Of a stretch of DNA of 64,000 nucleotides, positions 21,659 to 47,528 are shown piece by piece (within the stretch, counting starts at the first letter, position 1; every line of letters begins with the position of its first letter). Position numbers and translations under genes: made by a program. The DNA is from Oikopleura dioica (Eukaryota; Animalia; Chordata), in contig OU015566.1 of NCBI GenBank assembly GCA_907165135.1, positions 11,222,001 through 11,286,000 on the forward strand, written 5' to 3'. The notes beneath the pieces were generated by a model. That model saw only the letters and a program-made list of their open reading frames with translations, had not been told where the DNA came from and searched no databases.

Positions 21659-23445
21659 ATGAGCCGCTTCTACGAGATTCGTGCGTTGGTTCAGGTGAGG
21701 AGTCACGTAATATTGTGAAACTACAATTTACATCTAGTGTTTTCCAATTTGCTCGTTTTTCTTTGCTTTTGTCAGAATATTTCTGAGGTTATAAAAAAGT
21801 TTCAGAGAGGAAACACGAAAAGCCCTTGCGTTGGACCAAGGCCAAAGAGAGTCTTTCAGATCTTCGCCAGAAGATCTGGTATCCTTTCAGAAGAACGAGA
21901 GAGAAAATGAGCAAGAGACATGAACTGGCGCTTTTAGCCTGGCTGGGATTGATGCTGGTAAGAAAATTTGACATTGCCATCATTCTAAGAAATTGTAGAT
22001 CTTCATCAGCAAGCAAAATCTTTCCATAGCCGTTATTGGAATGAACTCAAATAATTCGACGGAAGTTGAAGATGAGACGAACCATTGCTCAGGGGAAACA
22101 AATTCGAATGCTACAGAATCACTACAGAGCCAAGAAACAGAGTTTCATTGGACAGAATCACAGGAAATGAAGCTCCTGGGGTGCTATTACTATGGATATG
22201 TCCTGTTTCATATGGTAGGAGGATGGATTGGATTCAAATACGGATTCAAGAAGCTACTCTTTTGGTCATCGCTTGTTGGCGCGATAATCAACCTTGCCTT
22301 TCCTTATGCAATCCGATTGAGTTACAGTCTTGGTGTAATCTTAAGAATTTTACTCGGAATTTCTCACAGTGGATCTTCAGCAGCTATGACTGAAGCATGG
22401 GCAAAATGGGCTCCGCAAAATGAAAAGTCTTTCTTGCTCAATTTGATCTTCTCGGGGATGACTTTCGGTCTCTTGCTGACAAATCTCGCGGGCGGCTGGA
22501 TCATTCAATCTTATGGTTGGCCCGTAATTTTCCATATTCCAGCAATCGCTACCTTTCTATGGGTTCTTGTTTGGCAATTTCGCGTGACAGAAACGCCCGA
22601 AGAGCACAAGACAATTTCAAAGGAAGAGTTAGAACTAATCGTATCGACTCGATCTGGCCAAAATAATATGGCAAAAACGGATATTCCTTTCATGAAACTC
22701 TTTACTTATCTTCCTGTTTGGGGATTCATAATCGGATGCATTGGTAAAGATTTTGCTGCTTTTACGGCAATGCAAATGTTTCCGATGTACATGAACAGGA
22801 AGGGTTGAAAAATACATCGATAGTTTTTTCAGGATGAAAGTGATTTCAACCTCATTAAGAATTCTTGGATTCGACATCAAAGCAAGCGGTCTTTACTCAG
22901 CTCTACCAATGCTTTGCTTAACAATATCGGAAATTCTCATTGGCTATTTATCTGATATTTCAATACGATCCATCGGAATAAGTAAAACAAGGAGAGGCTC
23001 AATCATGATCGGCGCCATCGGATGTGGTGGTAGCTTTCTAGCGATGAATTTTATCGGGTGCAATGTTTCTCTTGCCTTATTGCTGCTGAATTCATCCCTT
23101 TTATGGCTTGGCCTTTACGTAAATTTATATTTACTACCAGAGTAAGAATAGATTCAGTGTGTTAATATCCAATCTAACGTCCTTGACTTCGGCGCTGAAT
23201 ACGCTGGAAGAATAAACTCAATCTCTAACACCTTTTCCAATTCTGCAGGATTCGCTGCACCCCAACTGGCCGGGGCAATCTTGGAAACATTTGGAAACAC
23301 ACGAAAAGGATGGGGTTACAGTTTTGCTCTGACGACTGCCATCTGCCTTTCTTCAGCCATATTTGGAGTCTGTTCGATCGTTTTTGAAAATATCTTTGGA
23401 AACAAAGACGAAAACGTCGCCGGTGAAAAGGAGCCTTTAAAATAA
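21659..23445 (+). CDS. SLC17-family MFS anion transporter (sialin/VGLUT-like)
   Basis: RHELALLAWLGLMLVR, LLGCYYYGY, WAKWAPQNEK, GWPVIFHI, PVWGFIIG, NTFSNSAGF motifs and multiple TM segments. Confidence 0.9.
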
Positions 23446-23649
23446 GCCTTATGTCTTTGTAAATAAATCATTACATGGAATAAATGTTTATTCAAGTTTT
23501 GGTGGAGCAGGTGCAGGCATTCTAGATGAAAATATTTTTTCAAGCATTCTTCTCTAGACGTTTTCAAAAACAAAAATAACCGTCAATCTTCCTGGTTAAT
23601 AGCTGTCGAATTCGTATTACTGGAAAGATTAAAGATCAGGCGAATTAAT

Positions 23650-24638
23650 ATGAGAAACTCAAGATCAATGAGCCTAGATTCTGACTGCAAAAGAGGGAGA
23701 TCTCGCAGAAGCAACTCACGCTCAGGTAACTTGCTCAAATAACATGTATTCACATGAAATTTGTTAGTAAAACGAAGTCCCTACCGACGTAGATCTCGAT
23801 CCCGTAGTAGATCTCAACGTAGACGGGATTCCCGATCAAACTCAAGACGTCGTCTTAAAGACAGAGACGCTATGTACCGGGGTCGTCAGTCATTTCGAGA
23901 TCATCCACGAGCCTCAAGAACTTTAGGTAAAATCGAGTAAAAATTTAGGATCTATTTTCATTTTTGGTATCTTCAATCTCGGCCGAGATATCTCACGGAA
24001 TGAACTTCGAAAGGTGTTTGAACGATATGGCCGTATTTTGGTATGACACGGAATGTAATTTAAACCTAAGTAAAGCTTTATAGTCCTGTAACCTTGTTTA
24101 CGATCGAGAATACAAAGAATCGAGGGGTTTTGGATTTGTGACCTTTGAGAACATTGATGACGCTATTTATGCGAAAAAGGATGCAAATGAAATCTACATC
24201 GGTTCTGGAGAAAGGTAAAAATCAAATCTTACTGTCGCGTATTACATTTTCAGTAGAATCCGAATTGACTACAGTATCACGGAGCAATCTCGCGTTGACT
24301 GCTTTAAGCGCGACGACAGGCGTAGATTTGCTGGACACAATCCACGAGGATACAATGAAAGAAGACAATCTCGATCGAGAAGCCGACAACGCTATTCTAG
24401 CTCACGAAGTCGGAGACGGTATTCACGATCTAGAAGTCGCGGACGACGCTATCGATCCCGGAGTCATGAGCGATATTCTCGTAGAAATCGTTACTCTCGA
24501 TCGCGCAGTCGAGGCAGGAAAAATGGTCGAAGTCAATATTCACGAGATCGGTCAATAGCTCGTGGCCGCTCTCCATCTCCTTATCTTAGCAAACTTTCTA
24601 AAAGCGTCGAAAAAGAGGACGCATCAACTGGATGGTAG
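23650..24638 (+). CDS. TRA2: Transformer-2-like SR splicing factor (RS-RRM-RS)
   Basis: RRM with LGIFNL, ESRGFGFVTFE and IRIDYSIT, flanked by RS repeats. Confidence 0.85.
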
Positions 24639-24934
24639 CTAGGCGTTTTAAGTTCCTTTATCTAATGAAATTGTTAAGGGGCGCGAAAAAAGAAGGTTCC
24701 TCACCTCCTGGATGGTATCTCTATCATTTTTTCCTAGCGTGACAAAATATTTTAGGGGCACGAAGAAAGAGAGCTCTCCTGCACGATGGTAGTTCAATTT
24801 TGACTGCCTTACTTTATTTATTTTGTCATGTTGAGCATGCATCACTGCCACACTCAATATTGCAATACATTCATTTATTCGACACTTGTAGATAATTAAT
24901 GTGATATTAGGCAGTAAAGCAAGCGCAGATTTAT

Positions 24935-26316
24935 TCACCACTGTTTTGTCGGTTGTTGGGGGCGAATGTTCACTCCTCCTGGTCGTTGCTGGTTCACTGG
25001 AGGTTCTTAAATTCGTGAAGAAGGAGTTTACAATGAGACCTTACGATTTCGAGCGCCCGATGTGACATTTGTGAGCCCAATTCCGTAGTAATATGTGCCG
25101 ATGAGGCTATTTGTGTCGTCATCATCGTTGTATCGTCGGTTTTCAAGGTTGTGGCGTTTGTTATCGAGAGATGCTTCTATCTTGTCGACTAGTTTGTTGA
25201 CCAAATCGTTTACTTGCTTAATTTTGTCGGCATCGATCGTTGAGTCTAAATGAAACTTGCATCTGACGCTGCTACAGTGTGCACTTACTGTCTTTGTTCA
25301 GTTCCTTTTGAAGCGCATCTACCGCGGGATCAGGCTTGGTTCGAAGGTAATCAGGGACTACTTCGTGGTTTACAGATGGAACGCGTTCTTCGGTCAATCT
25401 AGCGACCACTTCGTCTCGGTGCGGGTTGAGGATTACGGGGAAGCAGCTCGTATTACTAGATCAGCGGATATTCTAGCTGTATTTTTAAAGATGGAGCTTA
25501 CACAAGTCGCGGAGCACTTTCACTTCTAAGATATCGCGTTAGTGTTTCAATTTGGCCTTATAAAGTGTCAAAAGCGCTCGACAATCTGTTCAGTAGTGCA
25601 CTTTTCTGACCTTTCCTGTAATAAGCGCGTAGCTATCTAACAGACTCGCCCAATTTGGCTCTCGTCCTTGCGCCAACTCAGAATCAAGCTTTCCCAAAAG
25701 TCCTGAATTTGTTAAATACAAAATAGAATCTTATTTTTTACCTTCGAGGGCGATTTTCAAGTCTTTCGAGCGGCAGGGATCTAAATTTTTTCGCGAAAAT
25801 CGCAATTTGCGAATATTTTGCGATTGCGATACGAAATTTCGCAGAAAATTCGCAATCGCAAATTATTTTTTGATCGAATCGCAATCGCATCGCAATCGCA
25901 ACTCAGTTTTCGTCAATAATTCGCAAATTGCGATTTTTTTGCGAACTTTGGTCTTGTCAAAATGCTCCTTCGTTATTCTGACATGGGTTTTCTTTGACTC
26001 AGAGCCTATTTTCTGTGTTCTAAAGGCTTAATTGTAAGCCTGACCTCAAAAAATAGTCTTAAATCCTTTGAAAAATTACTTTTTACGCTAAAATTTCGCA
26101 AATGGCGACAAAATCGCAATTCGCGAAAAATTCGCAATTTGCGAAAAAAATCGCAATCGCATCGCAATTTCCGGACTATTTTGCGTCGCAATCGCATCGC
26201 AATAGCAATTTATTTTCGGCAAAAATTTAGATCCCTGTCGAGCGGTGATAAACGGTGGAAATTCCATTATCCAGTTGTTTCTCAATAAGGTTCGTAGACG
26301 CCTGATTAAAACTCAT
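24935..26316 (-). CDS. MED8: Mediator subunit 8; first coding exon interrupted by a MITE
   Basis: MSFNQASTNLIEKQL...KDLKIALE, WASLLDSYALITGQI, TEERVPSVNHEVVPDYLRTKPDP and DTNSLIG match MED8 motifs. Confidence 0.9.
25774..26237. mobile_element. 464-bp MITE (hAT/P-type ends) inside the MED8 coding exon
   Basis: Perfect 17-bp TIR CAGGGATCTAAATTTTT; 8-bp TSD TCGAGCGG at 25766-25773 and 26238-26245; subterminal TCGCAA/TTGCGA microrepeats. Confidence 0.95.
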
Positions 26317-26588
26317 TCTAAAACAGGAATTTTTTTAATATTGCTAGAAGTACAGCTTTGAAACATCTGTAATCAGCAGGTTGAAAGAGCATGACAAATC
26401 GGATTAGCCTTGAGCTCTAATCGGTATTAGCGCACTACGATCAGATTAAAAAAAGTCAAACTATATCCCGGTATCCGCGGGTCCTCTTCGAGCTCTGGCT
26501 CCGAGCCCCTCCGCGGGATTAGCAACATAAACCGACCCCAAATCTTTTGGCCTCTAATTTTTGCCGCTGTCTACGGATTGTTGACATT

Positions 26589-27937
26589 ATGGCACGTCAA
26601 AATAATATTCTTCTTTTTATATCGATTCTTGGTTTTATCTCAATATTCGACTTTTTTGAGAAATGGGCATTTGAAGAGAAAAATGAAGATTTACTCTCGT
26701 GTCCGGACTTTGGCGGGGATTTCATGTTCTCAAATGAGCCTAAATATTCATGAAGGGCTCGAAATGCGATTTTTATTCAGTCATTTTGGAAAATATTGAG
26801 CCTTAAAAAGTTAACGACAATAAATTCATGGGACATTGGCTCACTCACGGTCCGAATAATCAAATAAAAGACTTCAGAAGCGGAATATACGCTTCTATCG
26901 CAATGAAGCGAGCTGTTTTCCCGCCACTATTCTATTTCGGGATAGAAAAGAAACTTCTTTTATTAACCATCATCAATATTTATCCCGGCTCAGTTCTCAT
27001 TCAAACTCTGGGTCTCACAGTAAACTTGAAATATTTCATGTTTTGGACCTAGAAGAACTATCGAAACTGATAACAATTAGCGCCCCTTCGCAAATCGCGG
27101 AGAAATGTTTCGAACTTGGTGATTCCGGGGGAACAATACCAACTGGATTCAAGCAAAATATTCCAGCCGAACGAATTGATGATTTGATAGCCTATTACGG
27201 CTTCAATCGGAAGAACTCGAATTATTTTTCAAAAAGTCTTGAAATGGATGTTCGCAAGAAAGAACATCTAAATTTCAGCTCTATCGCAACAAGATTCAAC
27301 TATCCGGAATCGTGCATCCTTCAAGAACATCCCTGGAGAAACATCGATTACGACCAAAATTTGTGGAATGAGATAGTTCGAGCAACCCCAAGGCCGAAAT
27401 ATATCCGAAACGCGGCTGGCTGGATTAGGGATTTACTCTTTGGGGAAGATGAATATGCGGCGATGCACTGGCGATACAATAAAAACGTAAGATATCTACA
27501 ACTATCGAGTCAAATAAATGTTTTAGGACTGGGGAAAACACTGTGGCTCGGCTGGAGAATGGCGATCATGTCCAATCTACGAGCTTGGAACGAAAAATCC
27601 CGCTCTCTTTGCGCAGAAACTGACCAAACTCCTCAAAGAAAAGAATATCTATAAATTATACATCGCCGCTCCTCCAGATCAGTCCCGCCTTGTTGAAACA
27701 TTCAAGGACGAGATCTTGAAGATCGATGGAAAATTTGATGTTCTCGTTGGATTAGACGCGGTGAAGTTATTGCAAATACGGTACCCGAGATGCAAGTTCA
27801 TGAAAGAACACATGAACAATGTATTTTCGATAACAGAGCAAGAAGTGTGCTTTCAGTCTAAATTGTTTATTAGAGCAGGTTTGTTAGTATTGAAGAAGGG
27901 GATAACGGAATTCAGATCAATCAACTTGGTCGAGTAA
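26589..27937 (+). CDS. O-fucosyltransferase-family (POFUT-like, GT-B) type II membrane protein
   Basis: N-terminal TM, then GPNNQ, YAAMHWRY, LYIA and SITEQEVCFQSKLFI motifs. 3' end approximate. Confidence 0.7.
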
Positions 27938-30900
27938 TATTCGCGAAGAAAGAGATGCTGTCGCATCGAAGAAAAACTTATCTGAAACAATTCCTCTATC
28001 AGAAATTCTAGAGCTCGAATTGAGTTCAACTCGCTGGGCATGAAGGGATAAACTGTACAAGGTGAACAAATATTTAGACTTATTTATTATTAAACTCTGT
28101 AAGGAAACTGACAATAGTACAGTTGATTTTCGGCTTCTTCAGTAGGGCATGTCTGCAAGTTTGTATAAGCCAGCATGTTGACTGTATTTTTGAAATCGCT
28201 GACGACAGGTTTGAAGAGTTCCAATTTAGAGAATGTCAAGGACTGAAAAATTTTTATCAATTTTGAATATTTATGCGAGTTTCTTACGTTATTATTGGCA
28301 CCAAGTTGTAGCCTCTTTTCAGTGCACTTTTTCTTACAGCGACTTGCACCCTCTTTATCTTTTCTCGTTTCCTTCGGGCATGATTCCGTGAATGGCTTCT
28401 CGAGTCCAGAAGAGGAGAAAATCATGGCCTCATCATACTGATATTCTTCTAATATTTCTTTATATTCTCCTTCTTTTCGGTAATAAATCAACAGGTCATT
28501 TTCTTCGCCGAGTTTGAGCGGGAATCTATGCTGGTGGCAATGTAGCTTTATGACAACACTTTTACAATCTTCGATCATGATCTTTTTAGTGTTAGAAAAA
28601 AGATTCTAGTTGAATAAAGAGCCTTCAAGAGGGCTAACATGTTTTCAACACTTTCCTGGACAGTTTCTGGTCTCTCTTCCACTATTTGATCAAAATCAGT
28701 AAAGGAATCCATTCGGTACACCTTGTCGAATTCCTGATCTTCGTCGAAAAATTTCACCACGTACTGGAGAATGTTCTGGTACTTAGGGGATTTAGCACAT
28801 TCATGCACTGTGAATTGAGTCCTAAAAAGCCATAAGCCTTTGATTAAGATGATTCACTGTACCTAACACCAAGAGCTCTTGCTTTCAGGTCATTTAAGCT
28901 GTAATTAAAATGTGTGTGTCCCATCAGACCAAATCTATCTAACTCGGGCTTGAAGATTTCAGTTAGATTATCTTCTTTGTCCGGCTTGAGTTGATAGAAG
29001 ACAGAGGATTCGTCGAGGTGAAGATCTAGACTTGGGATCTGCTCACAAGTGCTCGTAACATTGGAGATTCCTGCAATCAGGGCTGGATATTTTGAAATCA
29101 GCAAAAATTTCAAATCAATTTTTGTGTGAAATCTCATTTCTATCTCAAAATTTTGCACCATCTCAACAAATCTCAAATTTCAATATTATCGCAACTCCCT
29201 CGTCATAATTTTTCCATTCTTGAGATTGCTGAGATCTCGAGATCTCAAATCTCAAAATTTTGCAAACCGCGCAAGGGCCGCGGACAAACGTCGCGGGCTT
29301 AGAGCAAGACTTGTGATTGGTTCAGATGGACCTGAAATGCTTGAGATCTCAGAATTTCAAATTTCATTTCATTGCAACGCGCGTATCCAACTCACGCAGT
29401 TTTCTGAAATGCTTGAGATCTCAGCATTTCAAATATCATTTTTTTGCAAAATCGAAAATTGAGATCTCAGACAGAAAATTTTCTGAGATTGCATTTTTGA
29501 AATGGATGAGATGATGATTCATGTTTTTTTCGGGGTTTGAAATTTTTGTTGATTTCAAAATATCCAGCCCTGCCTGCAATAGTGTTGAGCGGACTGTTTA
29601 GTGTTTCAGATTTGTAATGACTAACAAACATATACACAAGCTTAATTGAAACATTTCCTGAATGGAGTGACATCAAACGTAGTGCAGTCTGCACATTCAC
29701 CATTGATGATCTCGTTGATATCGCTTCTGAAGTTAAAGTTGTCGTTGGCGACAATTTTATGCTTGACAACATGTCCTTCTTGTCCATAAAACGTAAGCGC
29801 ATTGCCAGCAGTTTCGATCCAGAACTGACTAGAGTCCTCTGTGAGCGGTAAACTTTTGAAGAAGCTACCGATAAGATTCTGTCCTTTGTTGTCGTTGATG
29901 AATATTCGTCCATACGCCTTGTTGCTTCCCTTTTTGCCATGATTTATTCCTCCAAAAGTGATTCCCATTTTGATATCGCAGTGCTTTCCTCGGCAAGATT
30001 CTAGGTTCTTCAGTGATTTTGCTTCTCGTTCGCCATCGCTTTTGTTGAGCACTATTTCTCCATTAGAAATCGCGAGGGTTCCGGCGGTAAAAGTAAAGAT
30101 GTTGAAGTCTTTAGAAACATCGACATCGTACATTTCAGAAACAAATACGACAGCAGCGGAGTCCTCACTCTCACAGACATCGTCGTTTATGCATTTTTGA
30201 GTATCCGCAAGCGCCTTGTCGAATGAGTCGGTGAAAATGTTCAGTTGCTTTCCAAGAGCAGCAGAATCGATGGAGATTTTTCCTTCCGCGTTGTAGCGTG
30301 TACATTCTCGAGCATCACTATCTTTGTATTCTTCGGGGACGATGAAGTCGTTCTTGACGATGAAGTTGAATTTAGTATCAGCTGTTGGTTCGTACGAAGG
30401 ATGAAGAGCTTCGTTATGATTGATTTTAAGTCCAACAAAGCCAACCGCACGACCTGCCAAATTTGCAGGAGGATGCAAGTAAGAAAGACCCGGAGGAGAG
30501 ACTATTTTTCGCAGTTCATTTTCTTCGATGTAATCCTGACGCTCTTCGAGTTCCGGTAATTGATCGATCAGACACCAGAATATCTTTTTACAGTTCTCAA
30601 GCTCTAAGCAATCACTTTCTTTCTTGGCGTTGGTTCTGAGACGCTTCGGTCGCTCAGACATGATCATTTTTGGCTTTTGGTCGCTGAACAAAACTCTTGG
30701 ACTATTTTCGCCAAGTTCCAAGGATTTAAAATCTCTGGAGCATGATTGATCCTCAGCACCATCTTCATCTCTGCATTGAACCAGCTTGTTCGTGCTCATT
30801 TCAGAATCTTTTGCAATGTTGGTACTTCGGACAAGGAGTTCGAATCTGTTCAATCGCTGGAGTAGGCGAACATTGATGAATCGACCTCCATCTTGGTCGT

Positions 30901-45568: not shown

Positions 45569-47528
45569 ATGTGGAATCAAGCCAGGCTTTCTATCGCATT
45601 AGACTGAGATAATGAAACATTGTTGAAAAAGCATTCGTTAGTGAAAATTATTGATGGAGGCATGGGCACGGAACTTGTGCGTTGTGGCGTTGAAGATGTT
45701 GACAAGCACAAGCTGTGGTCGGCATTGGCCAATGTTGAGTTCCCTGATTCTGTAGTGCAAGGCAAGATTCACCAAATTATGAAAACATCTATCTTTTTCT
45801 AATTTTTAACCACTATAATTAGCCCACAAGAATTTTATCAACGCTGGAGCCGATATCATCATCACAAATACTTATCAATCGAACCAGCCACTGCTCATGA
45901 GTGAGCTGAAGATATCAAGAGAGGAAGCAGACAACCTGCTTCTAAAAACTCTTGATCTTGCTCGTGAAGCAGCAGGGCCGGGCACAATCGTTGCGGGATC
46001 AATTGGACCCTATCCGGACTGCCCAGCTTCCGAATACAACCCGGAGTATTTGAAAAGGATTAGTTTCGAGGAGCTTTACGAGTGGCATCGCCCGAGATTC
46101 GAGATCTTGGCAAAGGAGAGTTTTATATTGCAGAATTCAGATCTTCTTGACCCTGAATAAAACCTTACAGAGTTCAAAAGTCGACATTCTCGCGTGTGAA
46201 ACAATGCCTGGAATAAAAGCAGGGTGGCTATTTTGGACAAAATTTTGGGGTCTAGCCATCCAATTTCCATCCAATAAATTTTGAGTCGGAACTATCCATC
46301 CAAAATCCAACCCAATCCAATTATTACCCAATTCCCCAAGAATCCCCAATTCCAATAAGATCCAATTGGATTTCCAATTTTTCCAAGGCTTTTAGTACTT
46401 TGAAAAGAAGCGAAACAGTTAGTTTCTATCCGAAAGGAGGATCAACATAGCCAAAAGAATGATTTTTTATCCGAAATTTTTCATTTTTATCATGAAAATG
46501 ACCCTTCTTTGCATAGTTAAGCGATACAGTGAAAACTCAAAATTTGCCCACTCGAAATTTGGCCGGTTTTGGTCGAAATTGACTGATTTAAGAATCTGAA
46601 AAAGACTCAAAAATTGGCCGCTTTTTCAATAATAGAAAATTTTGGATCAAAATTGCGCCTAAATTATGCTATTCCTGGGCATTTTTAGCTTTTTTAGACT
46701 GTTAAAATTATTTAAAATGACTAATTTCTAAAATAAATGTCTTCAAACAAGCAAAAATTTGAATTAAATTGTTCAAAAACGTGAAAATCATGCCCATTTT
46801 CGAAAATTTGGAAAATTTGCTTCTTAGAAGTGGACTCTTGGCTATCCGGTAAAAAACTCAAAATTTGGCCGCTTTTTTCTTGAATAAGGATCTAAAAACC
46901 GGCCAATTTTTGAGTTTTAACTGTATATATTTTATTGGATCCAATTCCCCAATTTCCCCCAATTGCCCAATTTTTCCCAACAAAATCCGGTACCCTGGCC
47001 ATCCAAATTCCATCCAAACCTTATTGGATTGGATCAATCCAATTCCAACTAACCCCCAAATCCAAAATAGCCACCCTGATAAAAGAAGCTCAAGTTTTTC
47101 TCAAACTCCTGTCTGAAGTCAAAAAAGAAGCTTACATATCGTTTACTTGTCAGAAGGGCACAACAAATGCTGGAGAATCCTTTTCTGATATTGTGAATAT
47201 GCTCAAATCTGAGAAGCCGGACAATTTGAGAGGAATTGGAATCAATTGCTCTGAGCCTGATGTTGTCGACGAATTCGGTACTGTCATGAAGGCAAACTTT
47301 CCAGAACTGACCTTGATTTGCTATCCAAATACGGGAGAGACCTGGACGAACAACGCTGGTGAATGGGAAGTTGAATCAAGCCAGTGGGGTGGAACTAGAG
47401 CTGACCTTGCCTCTTACGTACCAAAGTGGCTTGAAGTCGGATTCAAATGGATCGGTGGCTGCTGCAGAGTTGAACCTAAGGACATTTCAAAAATTGCAAA
47501 CATTGTCAAGAACAACACTGAACAATAA
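45569..47528 (+). CDS. Homocysteine S-methyltransferase family protein, possibly a disrupted allele
   Basis: IIDGGMGTEL, LWSA, GADIIITNTYQ, VAGSIGPY, DILACET, GIGINCS, CYPNTG and WIGGCCR (Zn-binding Cys). In-frame TGA at 45605 and a MITE in an exon. Confidence 0.9.
46220..47078. mobile_element. MITE (460 bp plus a nested element) inside the HMT coding exon
   Basis: 18-bp TIR CAGGGTGGCTATTTTGGA; 7-bp TSD ATAAAAG at 46213-46219 and 47079-47085; CCAAT/TCCAA microrepeats. Confidence 0.9.
46527..46923. mobile_element. Nested Tc1/mariner-type MITE (TA TSD)
   Basis: TA|CAGTGAAAACTCAAAATTTG ... CAATTTTTGAGTTTTAACTG|TA. Confidence 0.8.

What the first reader, a model, noticed from the sequence alone, without database searches (positions are those of the whole stretch)
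25766..26245. MITE inserted in the first coding exon of MED8 with its own splice sites
Removing the element and one TSD gives an uninterrupted EKQLDNGISTVYHRSKDLKIALE matching the MED8 N-terminus; unspliced, the frame stops within 4 codons. On the coding strand the left TIR reads CAG|GGATCT and the right TIR reads TTTAG|ATCCCTG, preceded by about 120 nt with no AG. A GG-AG intron (26234-25781, 454 nt) leaves an 18-nt in-frame insert (YHRS-TDPCRS-KDLK). A GC donor in the TSD (26243) would give +9 nt, also in frame. MED8 is a core Mediator head subunit and essential in yeast, so a null allele would be costly.
Basis: partly seen in the sequence, partly recalled or inferred. Interest (0 to 1): 0.88.

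Follow-up and report, generated by a model that had tools for sequence, protein, structure and literature searches.

The report
Young transposon splitting MED8's first exon
A 464-base mobile element recently landed in the first coding exon of the conserved MED8 gene of the sea animal Oikopleura dioica; some animals carry it and others do not, it could be spliced out in frame, but no RNA could be read to show that it is.

Summary
Window 25774-26237 is a 464-bp non-autonomous hAT/Ds-like element. It has perfect 17-bp terminal inverted repeats, an exact 8-bp target duplication, and 20 subterminal TCGCAA/TTGCGA hexamers. It lies between codons 26 and 27 of MED8, on the minus strand, in Oikopleura dioica OKI2018_I69 chr1.

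These are the stop after 3 codons, the GG-AG 454-nt intron giving +18 nt (STDPCRSK), the GC donor giving +9 nt, and the 121-nt AG-free tract.

New findings:
- The insertion is polymorphic. DNA run X26 holds the empty site. Run X25 shows only the filled site and no second haplotype over 5 kb.
- MED8 is under strong constraint (dN/dS 0.024).
- MED8's own intron 2 is GA-AG here and GC-AG in Bergen. A metatranscriptome contig confirms that exon junction.
- A second in-frame solution exists: the GG donor with the AG at 25764-25763 removes 472 nt and changes only K27T.
- The public gene model is broken by the element.

Splicing itself is unproven. The two RNA runs laid came from a diverged lineage, and no RNA-derived Okinawa MED8 was found.

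Best reading (about 0.6): the element is removed as a new non-canonical intron, as maize Ds1 and introners are. Main rival: a segregating null allele.

The scan has noted similar exonic hAT insertions elsewhere in this genome.

The parts
25774..26237 (.). 464-bp non-autonomous hAT/Ds-like element (MITE)
   Evidence: Perfect 17-bp TIRs. 20 TCGCAA/TTGCGA hexamers in the subterminal ~150 bp of both ends, 43/kb against 0.5/kb in the rest of the window. No long ORF. Its RNA folds to -178 kcal/mol, z = -9.2, with the TIRs paired. Word depth in X25 is about 5-45 times that of the flanks, and at least 7 other flanks join its end, so it is multi-copy.
25774..25790 (+). TIR CAGGGATCTAAATTTTT (3' end of the element on the coding strand; reads AAAAATTTAG|ATCCCTG there)
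26221..26237 (-). TIR CAGGGATCTAAATTTTT (5' end of the element on the coding strand; reads CAG|GGATCT...)
25766..25773 (.). target-site duplication, copy 1 (+ strand TCGAGCGG; coding strand CCGCTCGA)
26238..26245 (.). target-site duplication, copy 2
   Evidence: The empty allele in X26 joins 25767 to 26240, skipping 472 nt = 464 + 8.
26238..26316 (-). MED8 exon 1, part before the element (ATG at 26316; codons 1-26)
   Evidence: The same N-terminus is seen in Bergen, JGI and ENA proteins P0158, P0159 and P0162.
25742..25773 (-). MED8 exon 1, part after the element (RSKDLKIALE + G; GT donor of intron 1 at 25741)
26233..26234 (-). candidate non-canonical 5' splice site ACAG|GGATCT (exon ends at 26235)
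   Evidence: It is the only in-frame donor near the element with the AG|G..A context. That context is reported for O. dioica GA-AG sites (PMC7072748). Not shown at RNA level.
25781..25782 (-). candidate 3' splice site 1, TTTAG|ATCCCTG inside the TIR (454-nt intron, +18 nt, STDPCRSK)
   Evidence: The same acceptor is used by the public gene model g3057.t1 (P0157).
25763..25764 (-). candidate 3' splice site 2, CTCGAAAG|ACTTG in the exon just past the TSD (472-nt intron, same length as wild type, K27T only)
26242..26243 (-). alternative GC donor in the TSD (CACC|GCTCGA), giving +9 nt with acceptor 1
   Evidence: It lacks the upstream AG context.
24935..25702 (-). MED8 exons 2-6 (25702-25616, 25556-25502, 25455-25289, 25245-25045, 25005-24935 including the stop)
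   Evidence: Gene model. Pfam Med8 on exon 4. From PCRSKDLK onward it is identical to the annotated OKI2018_I69 protein P0157.
25557..25615 (-). MED8 intron 2, a GA-AG intron (ACAG|GAAAGG...TATAAG|GC)
   Evidence: It is the only splice that keeps the frame and the homology. In Bergen the same position is GC-AG, and the mRNA contig L007 shows the junction ACAG|GTCAAATTG.
26695..26725 (-). spurious first exon of the public model g3057.t1 (MKSPPKSGHE + one base of the N codon; GT donor at 26694)
   Evidence: It is joined over 914 nt to the TIR acceptor, and the true exon 1 start is skipped.

Best explanation
A very young, still polymorphic hAT/Ds-like MITE has inserted between codons 26 and 27 of the single, strongly constrained MED8 gene of Okinawan Oikopleura dioica. 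The most likely outcome is that the permissive U2-type spliceosome of this species, which routinely uses G[A/C/G]-AG introns, removes the element from the pre-mRNA as a newborn intron. The donor would be formed by the first bases of the TIR together with the last base of the TSD (ACAG|GGATCT). The acceptor would be either the AG built into the other TIR (TTTAG|ATCCCTG) or the next AG 18 nt downstream (GAAAG|AC). The first choice leaves 18 nt, a six-residue insert TDPCRS, in the long N-terminal helix of MED8. The second choice restores the wild-type length with a single K27T change. Either product keeps the frame, so the allele would stay at least partly functional. Shown: the element, its position, its youth and polymorphism, the in-frame splice solutions, non-GT splicing in this very gene, and the constraint on the gene. 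Also shown, with the limits of contig data: one DNA sample in which only the inserted allele was seen. Inferred: the splicing itself, which junction is used, and that the product works.
For: Element anatomy and exact position. Frame-preserving, stop-free donor/acceptor pairs are few, and the only one with the AG|G..A donor context is 26234 (context rule from PMC7072748). There is a 121-nt AG-free tract before the TIR acceptor. MED8 intron 2 is GA-AG here and GC-AG in Bergen, and the exon junction is confirmed by a metatranscriptome mRNA contig. 11% of OKI2018_I69 introns are non-GT/AG (PMC8008620). dN/dS is 0.024 against a sister lineage at dS 1.5, so loss of MED8 should be costly. Only one MED8 gene model from this assembly appears in the protein collection. 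DNA run X25 crosses both element borders in long contigs with no mismatch, shows no empty-site joint and no second haplotype over 5.1 kb, and its flank contig does not break at the insertion point. This argues that only the inserted allele was present in that sample. The in-frame stretch upstream of exon 1b inside the element holds no ATG, so no alternative start could rescue the protein. Precedents exist: exonic Ds1 supplies donors and acceptors within 35 bp of its ends (PMC5432752), and MITE-derived introns are described in Fritillaria and Micromonas (PMC11282704).
Against: There is no RNA evidence. RNA runs X7 and X8 gave only 9 and 12 partial reads at 90-95% likeness, so they come from another lineage. 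No spliced-junction sequence was found in JGI metagenome contigs. No RNA-derived Okinawa MED8 protein is in the collection. The GG donor is weak: it matches 6 of the 9 positions of CAG|GTAAGT by my own count, and +5 is not G. No CTRAY-like branch site lies in the last 135 nt. Both candidate splice sites sit in an approximately 18-bp TIR stem in the predicted RNA fold, which could hide them. A six-residue insert with a proline in the middle of helix 5-45 (pLDDT about 90) may not be tolerated. The insertion is polymorphic (empty allele in X26), as expected for a deleterious allele too. Contigs show presence, not absence, so homozygosity in X25 is likely but not proven. The merged-haplotype assembly (HaploMerger2, PMC8008620) could be enriched for insertion alleles; that is my inference.
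Confidence: 0.6

Rival explanations
1. The insertion is simply a recent loss-of-function allele. The element is not spliced out, or only rarely; translation stops 3 codons into it and the mRNA is degraded. The allele persists because it is young and mostly heterozygous, and the assembly happened to keep this haplotype.
For: Unspliced read-through gives ...YHRSTGI-stop. The insertion is polymorphic and is absent from X26's contig and from every other lineage. The donor is weak, there is no clear branch site, and the splice sites lie in a TIR stem. No spliced product was found anywhere. The reference individual has about 3.6% heterozygosity and its haplotypes were merged. Other notes of this scan describe several private exonic hAT insertions in this assembly; these are unchecked leads.
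Against: X25 shows only the filled allele, in long contigs with no mismatch that are unbroken at the insertion point, and no second haplotype over 5.1 kb. With dN/dS 0.024 a homozygous null of the only annotated MED8 should be severely harmful. A second exonic MITE 3 kb away on the same haplotype also has a precise GC-AG solution.
Confidence: 0.28
2. The allele is broken, but a second MED8 copy or the public model's alternative first exon (26725-26695 joined to the TIR acceptor) supplies a working protein.
For: The public model g3057.t1 encodes MKSPPKSGHEN-PCRSKDLK....
Against: That model lacks the conserved first 26 residues of helix 1. Its first exon is 31 nt in the intergenic stretch upstream of MED8, and its intron would be 914 nt in a genome whose median intron is 49 nt. 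I infer that it reflects a GT/GC-AG restriction in the predictor. Only one OKI2018_I69 MED8 protein was found, and X25 holds no empty-site copy.
Confidence: 0.05
3. The element is an assembly artefact, a mis-joined repeat in the Nanopore assembly.
For: The assembly shows a 1-nt homopolymer difference from X25 at 26330, so small errors do exist.
Against: Independent short-read contigs of X25 cross both borders exactly (24700-25802 and 26208-29104, no mismatch). The TSD is exact. X26 shows the matching empty site, skipping exactly 472 nt.
Confidence: 0.01

Closest known systems
Maize Ds1 (Ac/Ds, hAT) spliced from exon sequences (Wessler 1991, as described in PMC5432752)
   Same: A non-autonomous hAT element of about 400-500 bp with an 8-bp TSD. 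Its TIR begins CAGGGAT, where the Ac/Ds TIR is (C/T)AGGGATGAAA (PMC3260210). It has subterminal hexamer repeats and sits in a coding exon. Donor and acceptor candidates lie within a few bases of its ends, and removal would be imprecise, leaving element bases plus the TSD.
   Different: This is an animal (a chordate) host, and the donor would be non-canonical GG rather than GT. For Ds1 the splicing was shown at RNA level; here it is not. I did not test relatedness beyond the shared terminal bases, and there is no evidence of common descent.
Introners of Micromonas and Aureococcus (Huff, Zilberman and Roy 2016; reviewed in PMC11282704)
   Same: A MITE-like DNA transposon with TIRs and a TSD lands in coding sequence and carries splice signals at its ends. 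It is multi-copy and recent.
   Different: Introners use one site in the element and one made by the TSD, so removal is exact. Here the TSD (CCGCTCGA) offers no AG, so exact removal is impossible (my enumeration), and a scar of 18 nt or a K27T change would remain. Genome-wide intron creation by this family is not shown.
MITE-derived non-canonical introns of Fritillaria borealis (Henriet et al. 2019; PMC13326754, PMC11282704)
   Same: A larvacean tunicate without a U12 spliceosome, in which a U2-type spliceosome tolerates non-GT ends. MITE insertions in genes are the proposed source of lineage-specific introns.
   Different: F. borealis introns are mostly AG-AC or AG-AT and depend on duplicated U2AF paralogues. 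O. dioica keeps the AG acceptor and varies only the second donor base. No paper in the library searched describes MITE-born introns in O. dioica.

Membership tests
hAT-superfamily non-autonomous element (MITE / Ds-like) | 8-bp target-site duplication | tested here: met
   Exact TCGAGCGG on both sides. The empty allele skips 464 + 8 nt.
hAT-superfamily non-autonomous element (MITE / Ds-like) | Short terminal inverted repeats beginning (C/T)AG | tested here: met
   Perfect 17-bp CAGGGATCTAAATTTTT. The Ac/Ds TIR is TAGGGATGAAA (PMC3260210).
hAT-superfamily non-autonomous element (MITE / Ds-like) | Small size, no transposase gene, subterminal short repeats, many copies | tested here: met
   464 bp. 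20 TCGCAA/TTGCGA hexamers, all subterminal. Depth about 5-45 times that of the flanks, and at least 7 other flanks in X25.
hAT-superfamily non-autonomous element (MITE / Ds-like) | Mobilised by a hAT transposase | not testable with these tools
   No whole-genome search was possible. No autonomous partner was found in the window, though the window was not searched for a transposase.
Introner / transposon-born spliceosomal intron | Transposon inside coding sequence at a site that is uninterrupted in relatives | tested here: met
   Empty site in X26, in L006, in Bergen L008 and in mRNA contig L007.
Introner / transposon-born spliceosomal intron | Removed from the mRNA by the spliceosome | tested here: inconclusive
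   The RNA runs laid came from a diverged lineage. Junction pattern scan found 0 hits. No RNA-derived product in the protein collection.
Introner / transposon-born spliceosomal intron | Splice sites supplied by the element ends and/or TSD that keep the reading frame | tested here: met
   At sequence level only: ACAG|GG with TTTAG|AT gives +18 nt, and with GAAAG|AC gives +0 nt and K27T.
Introner / transposon-born spliceosomal intron | Many copies of one family forming introns in unrelated genes | not tested
   Only this copy lies in the window. Two other exonic MITEs in the window belong to other families. Other notes of the scan are unchecked leads.
MED8 (Mediator head subunit, Pfam PF10232) | Significant match to the Med8 profile and to solved MED8 chains | tested here: met
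   Exon 4: E=3.9e-16, 59.8 bits against a cut-off of 28.3. The Bergen orthologue against human MED8 7emf_H: E=9e-35.
MED8 (Mediator head subunit, Pfam PF10232) | Single-copy orthologue under purifying selection | tested here: met
   One OKI2018_I69 model in the 90% cluster. dN/dS 0.024. Single copy was not checked on the whole genome.

The most novel reading that the evidence does not exclude
The hAT MITE families of Oikopleura dioica would be true introners. Their CAGGG...CCCTG ends give a CAG|GG donor in either orientation, and in this family also a TTTAG|ATCCCTG acceptor. Every exonic insertion would then be removed leaving 3 + 7 + 8 = 18 nt, always in frame. Such events would be the source of the species' GG-AG and GC-AG introns and of its fast intron gain. 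The MED8 allele would be an intron birth caught while still polymorphic in a core transcription gene.
Probability: 0.25. Interest if true: 0.8.

Novelty: new member of a known kind. Interest (0 to 1): 0.5.

Why it matters
Oikopleura dioica is known for rapid intron turnover and for about 11-12% non-GT/AG introns, and the source of its new introns is still open. A transposon that is still present in some animals and absent in others, inside a strongly constrained single-copy gene, is a natural experiment with both alleles at hand. If only the inserted allele was present in the animal or animals behind X25, the test needs just one RT-PCR or one correctly matched RNA-seq mapping. That would show whether a transposon end can act directly as a GG donor in a chordate and what scar it leaves. 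A practical point: the public OKI2018_I69 model for MED8 (g3057.t1) is wrong at its N-terminus because of this element.

Tried and rejected
1. Read laying with RNA runs X7 and X8, which carry the same species label. Only 9 and 12 partial reads at 90-95% likeness were laid, so they come from a diverged cryptic lineage and say nothing about splicing.
2. A scan of JGI metagenome contigs for any spliced junction between GTTTATCACC and ATCCCTGCCGCTCGAAAG found 0 hits.
3. A scan of the same collection for the TIR gave 4 loci, all chance matches of 17-26 nt in unrelated DNA.
4. Protein searches for an RNA-derived Okinawa MED8 carrying STDPCRSK, HHPCRSK or RSTDLK found only empty-site proteins of other lineages and the broken public model.
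5. A search with an ORF internal to the element, to find other copies, returned no candidates.
6. An alternative start codon inside the element, in frame with exon 1b, does not exist.
7. Exact excision using the TSD is rejected: none of the nine registers ends in AG (read).
8. The canonical GT donor at 26253 in exon 1 is out of frame with both acceptors.
9. The papers of Denoeud 2010 and Wessler 1991 are not held, so their content is cited only through other papers or marked as my own knowledge.

Full report
WHAT IS THERE

On the minus strand the window reads ATG AGT TTT ... TAT CAC CGC TCG A | CAGGGATCTAAATTTTT ... AAAAATTTAGATCCCTG | CCGCTCGA AAG ACT TGA AAA TCG CCC TCG AAG | GTAAAA.
- The 17-nt end sequence occurs exactly twice in the 64-kb window, as an inverted pair at 25774-25790 and 26221-26237. 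By chance 0.02 matches are expected.
- The pair is flanked by an exact 8-bp direct repeat at 25766-25773 and 26238-26245.
- The 464-bp element has no long ORF. It carries 20 copies of the hexamer TCGCAA/TTGCGA, confined to the subterminal ~150 bp at both ends. That is 43 per kb against 0.5 per kb in the rest of the window.
- Its RNA folds into a long hairpin closed by the paired TIRs: -178 kcal/mol, z = -9.2 against shuffles.
- An 8-bp TSD, a TIR beginning CAGGGAT and subterminal hexamers are the anatomy of Ac/Ds-type hAT elements. The Ac/Ds TIR is TAGGGATGAAA, also with an 8-bp TSD (PMC3260210).
- In DNA run X25 the word depth over the element ends is about 12-45 times that of the flanks. At least seven contigs leave the element's end into other flanks, and shorter deletion derivatives appear. 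So it is one copy of a multi-copy family.

THE GENE AND THE GENOME

Upstream of the element the frame reads MSFNQASTNLIEKQLDNGISTVYHRS. Downstream it reads RSKDLKIALE, followed by a GT donor. With five short introns of 39-59 nt the gene encodes a 227-aa protein once the element and one TSD copy are removed.
- Exon 4 matches Pfam Med8 (E = 3.9e-16).
- The Bergen orthologue matches human MED8 in solved Mediator structures (E = 9e-35).
- Named relatives identify the organism as Oikopleura dioica.
- Window 21935-29725 is identical to OU015566.1 (chr1 of OKI2018_I69) 11243935-11251725.

Intron 2 can keep frame and homology only as a GA-AG intron (ACAG|GAAAGG...TATAAG|GC). In the Bergen genome the same intron is GC-AG. 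A 978-nt JGI metatranscriptome contig (L007) shows the spliced junction ACAG|GTCAAATTG. So non-GT donors preceded by CAG are used in this very gene. This fits the published figure of 11% non-GT/AG introns in this assembly (PMC8008620). It also fits the AG|GA..A context reported for O. dioica GA-AG sites (PMC7072748).

All of them hold.
- Unspliced, the frame stops after T-G-I.
- A GG-AG intron 26234..25781 is 454 nt and gives YHRS-TDPCRS-KDLK, which is +18 nt.
- A GC donor at 26243 gives YH-HPCRS-KDLK, which is +9 nt.
- The last AG before the TIR acceptor lies 121 nt upstream. Only 6 of 2000 mononucleotide shuffles of the element have an AG-free run that long. The tract is made of AG-free hexamer repeats, however, so this reflects composition rather than design.

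1. Listing every G-start donor and AG acceptor that keeps exon 1 open gives only eight pairs, made from four donors and two acceptors. The only donor with an upstream AG is 26234. Besides the TIR acceptor it can pair with the next AG, at 25764-25763 (CTCGAAAG|ACTTG). That intron is 472 nt, exactly element plus TSD shifted by three bases. The mRNA then has the wild-type length with ACA in place of AAA, a K27T change.

2. The insertion point lies in the middle of the long N-terminal helix of MED8 (residues 5-45, pLDDT about 82-91; AlphaFold model of the Bergen orthologue). It aligns to human V19|A20. A six-residue insert containing a proline is therefore not obviously harmless, whereas K27T probably is. 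This is inference.

3. The public gene model g3057.t1 (P0157) begins MKSPPKSGHEN-PCRSKDLK. It joins a 31-nt 'exon' at 26725-26695 (GT donor) over 914 nt to the TIR acceptor at 25781|25780 and skips the true start. I read this as a predictor restricted to GT/GC-AG introns working around the element. It shows that the trained model accepts this AG as an acceptor. It may or may not reflect RNA hints (methods in PMC8008620).

POPULATION STATE

Read laying on 24700-29800 gave two kinds of DNA result.
- Run X25 matches the assembly without a mismatch. One contig runs from 24700 through the insertion point to 25802, and another runs from 26208 to 29104. No contig joins the flanks, and no alternative letters appear in unique sequence over the 5.1 kb.
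- Run X26 (same study, another sample) has many SNPs, some at intermediate depth. It holds one contig that joins 25767 to 26240, skipping 472 nt. That is the empty site.
- An ENA metagenome contig of a related lineage (L006, 90-92% identical) also has the empty site and encodes DNGISTVYHRSKDLK. So do all Bergen-type sequences.

The insertion is therefore very young (perfect TIRs and TSD) and polymorphic. In X25 only the inserted allele is seen. A heterozygous empty allele at similar depth should have broken the flank contig at 25773 and produced a junction contig like the one in X26. Contigs cannot prove absence, so I put roughly 80% on X25 carrying only the inserted allele.

CONSTRAINT

Against the sister-lineage mRNA L007, MED8 has dN 0.037 and dS 1.52, giving dN/dS 0.024. 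Only one MED8 model from this assembly appears in the protein collection. The in-frame stretch inside the element upstream of exon 1b has no ATG, so no alternative start could rescue the protein.

RNA

This is the gap.
- The two 2026 RNA runs laid (X7, X8) gave 9 and 12 partial reads at 90-95% likeness, so they come from another cryptic lineage.
- A pattern covering every junction between GTTTATCACC and ATCCCTGCCGCTCGAAAG found nothing in JGI contigs.
- The protein collection holds no RNA-derived Okinawa MED8.

INTERPRETATION

The facts fit two readings.

(a) The element is removed as a newborn non-canonical intron, and the allele works. For this reading:
- only the inserted allele is seen in X25;
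- the gene is strongly constrained;
- G[A/C]-AG splicing occurs in this very gene;
- the donor has the right context;
- the in-frame solutions are built into the element's ends;
- a second exonic MITE lies 3 kb away on the same haplotype (29078-29572, TSD CCTGCAAT). It can be removed exactly as a GC-AG intron and is also absent from X26.

(b) It is a young null allele. For this reading:
- the insertion is polymorphic;
- the donor is weak, matching 6 of the 9 positions of CAG|GTAAGT by my own count;
- no branch-site match was found;
- both candidate sites are buried in the TIR stem;
- no spliced product was found;
- other notes of this scan report many private exonic hAT insertions in this merged-haplotype assembly. 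These are unchecked leads, not support.

I put 0.6 on (a). Within it the split is roughly 2:1 for the TIR acceptor (+18 nt) over the downstream AG (K27T), because the first AG after the branch is normally used. I put about 0.28 on (b) and the rest on compensation by another copy or transcript. An assembly artefact is excluded.

COMPARISON WITH WHAT IS KNOWN

The closest precedent is maize Ds1, a ~400-bp hAT element that is alternatively spliced from exons using donors and acceptors within 35 bp of its ends (Wessler 1991, as described in PMC5432752).

Introners of Micromonas and Aureococcus, and the MITE-derived non-canonical introns of the larvacean Fritillaria borealis, are the genome-scale versions (PMC11282704; PMC13326754). 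Unlike F. borealis, the acceptor stays AG.

I found no paper in the library searched that describes MITE-born introns in O. dioica. The finding is thus a new, unproven member of a known kind. The same theme has already been noted by this scan at other places in this genome.

Noticed in passing
window 29070-29580: A second hAT-like MITE (29078-29572, 495 bp, TIR CAGGGCTGGATATTTTGAAATC, exact 8-bp TSD CCTGCAAT) lies in a minus-strand coding exon (...NTIAG|ISNVTS...) of the laminin-like gene. On the coding strand, ATTGCAG|GCAGGG...CCCTGATTGCAG|G allows exact removal as a GC-AG intron. It is filled in X25 and empty in X26 (joint 29069->29573, skips 503).
   Followed up: partly
window 46221-47078: A third MITE with perfect 17-bp TIRs CAGGGTGGCTATTTTGG. 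The flanks share ATAAAAG, which is 7 bp, or 8 bp with one mismatch.
   Followed up: no
window 24935-26725 (OU015566.1 11,246,935-11,248,725): The public OKI2018_I69 model g3057.t1 (CAG5106913.1) for MED8 has a spurious N-terminus, MKSPPKSGHEN. It comes from a 31-nt upstream 'exon' joined to the AG inside the MITE's TIR, and the true first 26 codons are skipped.
   Followed up: yes
window 25557-25615; L008 2729-2788: MED8 intron 2 has a GA donor in the Okinawa genome and a GC donor in the Bergen genome at the same position. The exon junction is confirmed by a JGI metatranscriptome contig (L007). This is a donor dinucleotide swap between cryptic lineages.
   Followed up: yes
window 26330: In the A-run just upstream of the MED8 ATG, the assembly has one more base than the X25 short-read contig. 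X26 agrees with the assembly. This is either a residual homopolymer error or a polymorphism.
   Followed up: no
window 26317-26330: The MED8 ATG is preceded directly by CCTGTTTTAG|A. This looks like a 3' splice or trans-splice acceptor one base before the start codon, which would fit SL trans-splicing as known in this species (my own knowledge; not tested).
   Followed up: no
window 25798-26197 (X25 contigs): X25 holds contigs that join 25798->26126 and 25808->26197 within the element. These are shorter deletion derivatives of the same MITE family elsewhere in the genome.
   Followed up: no
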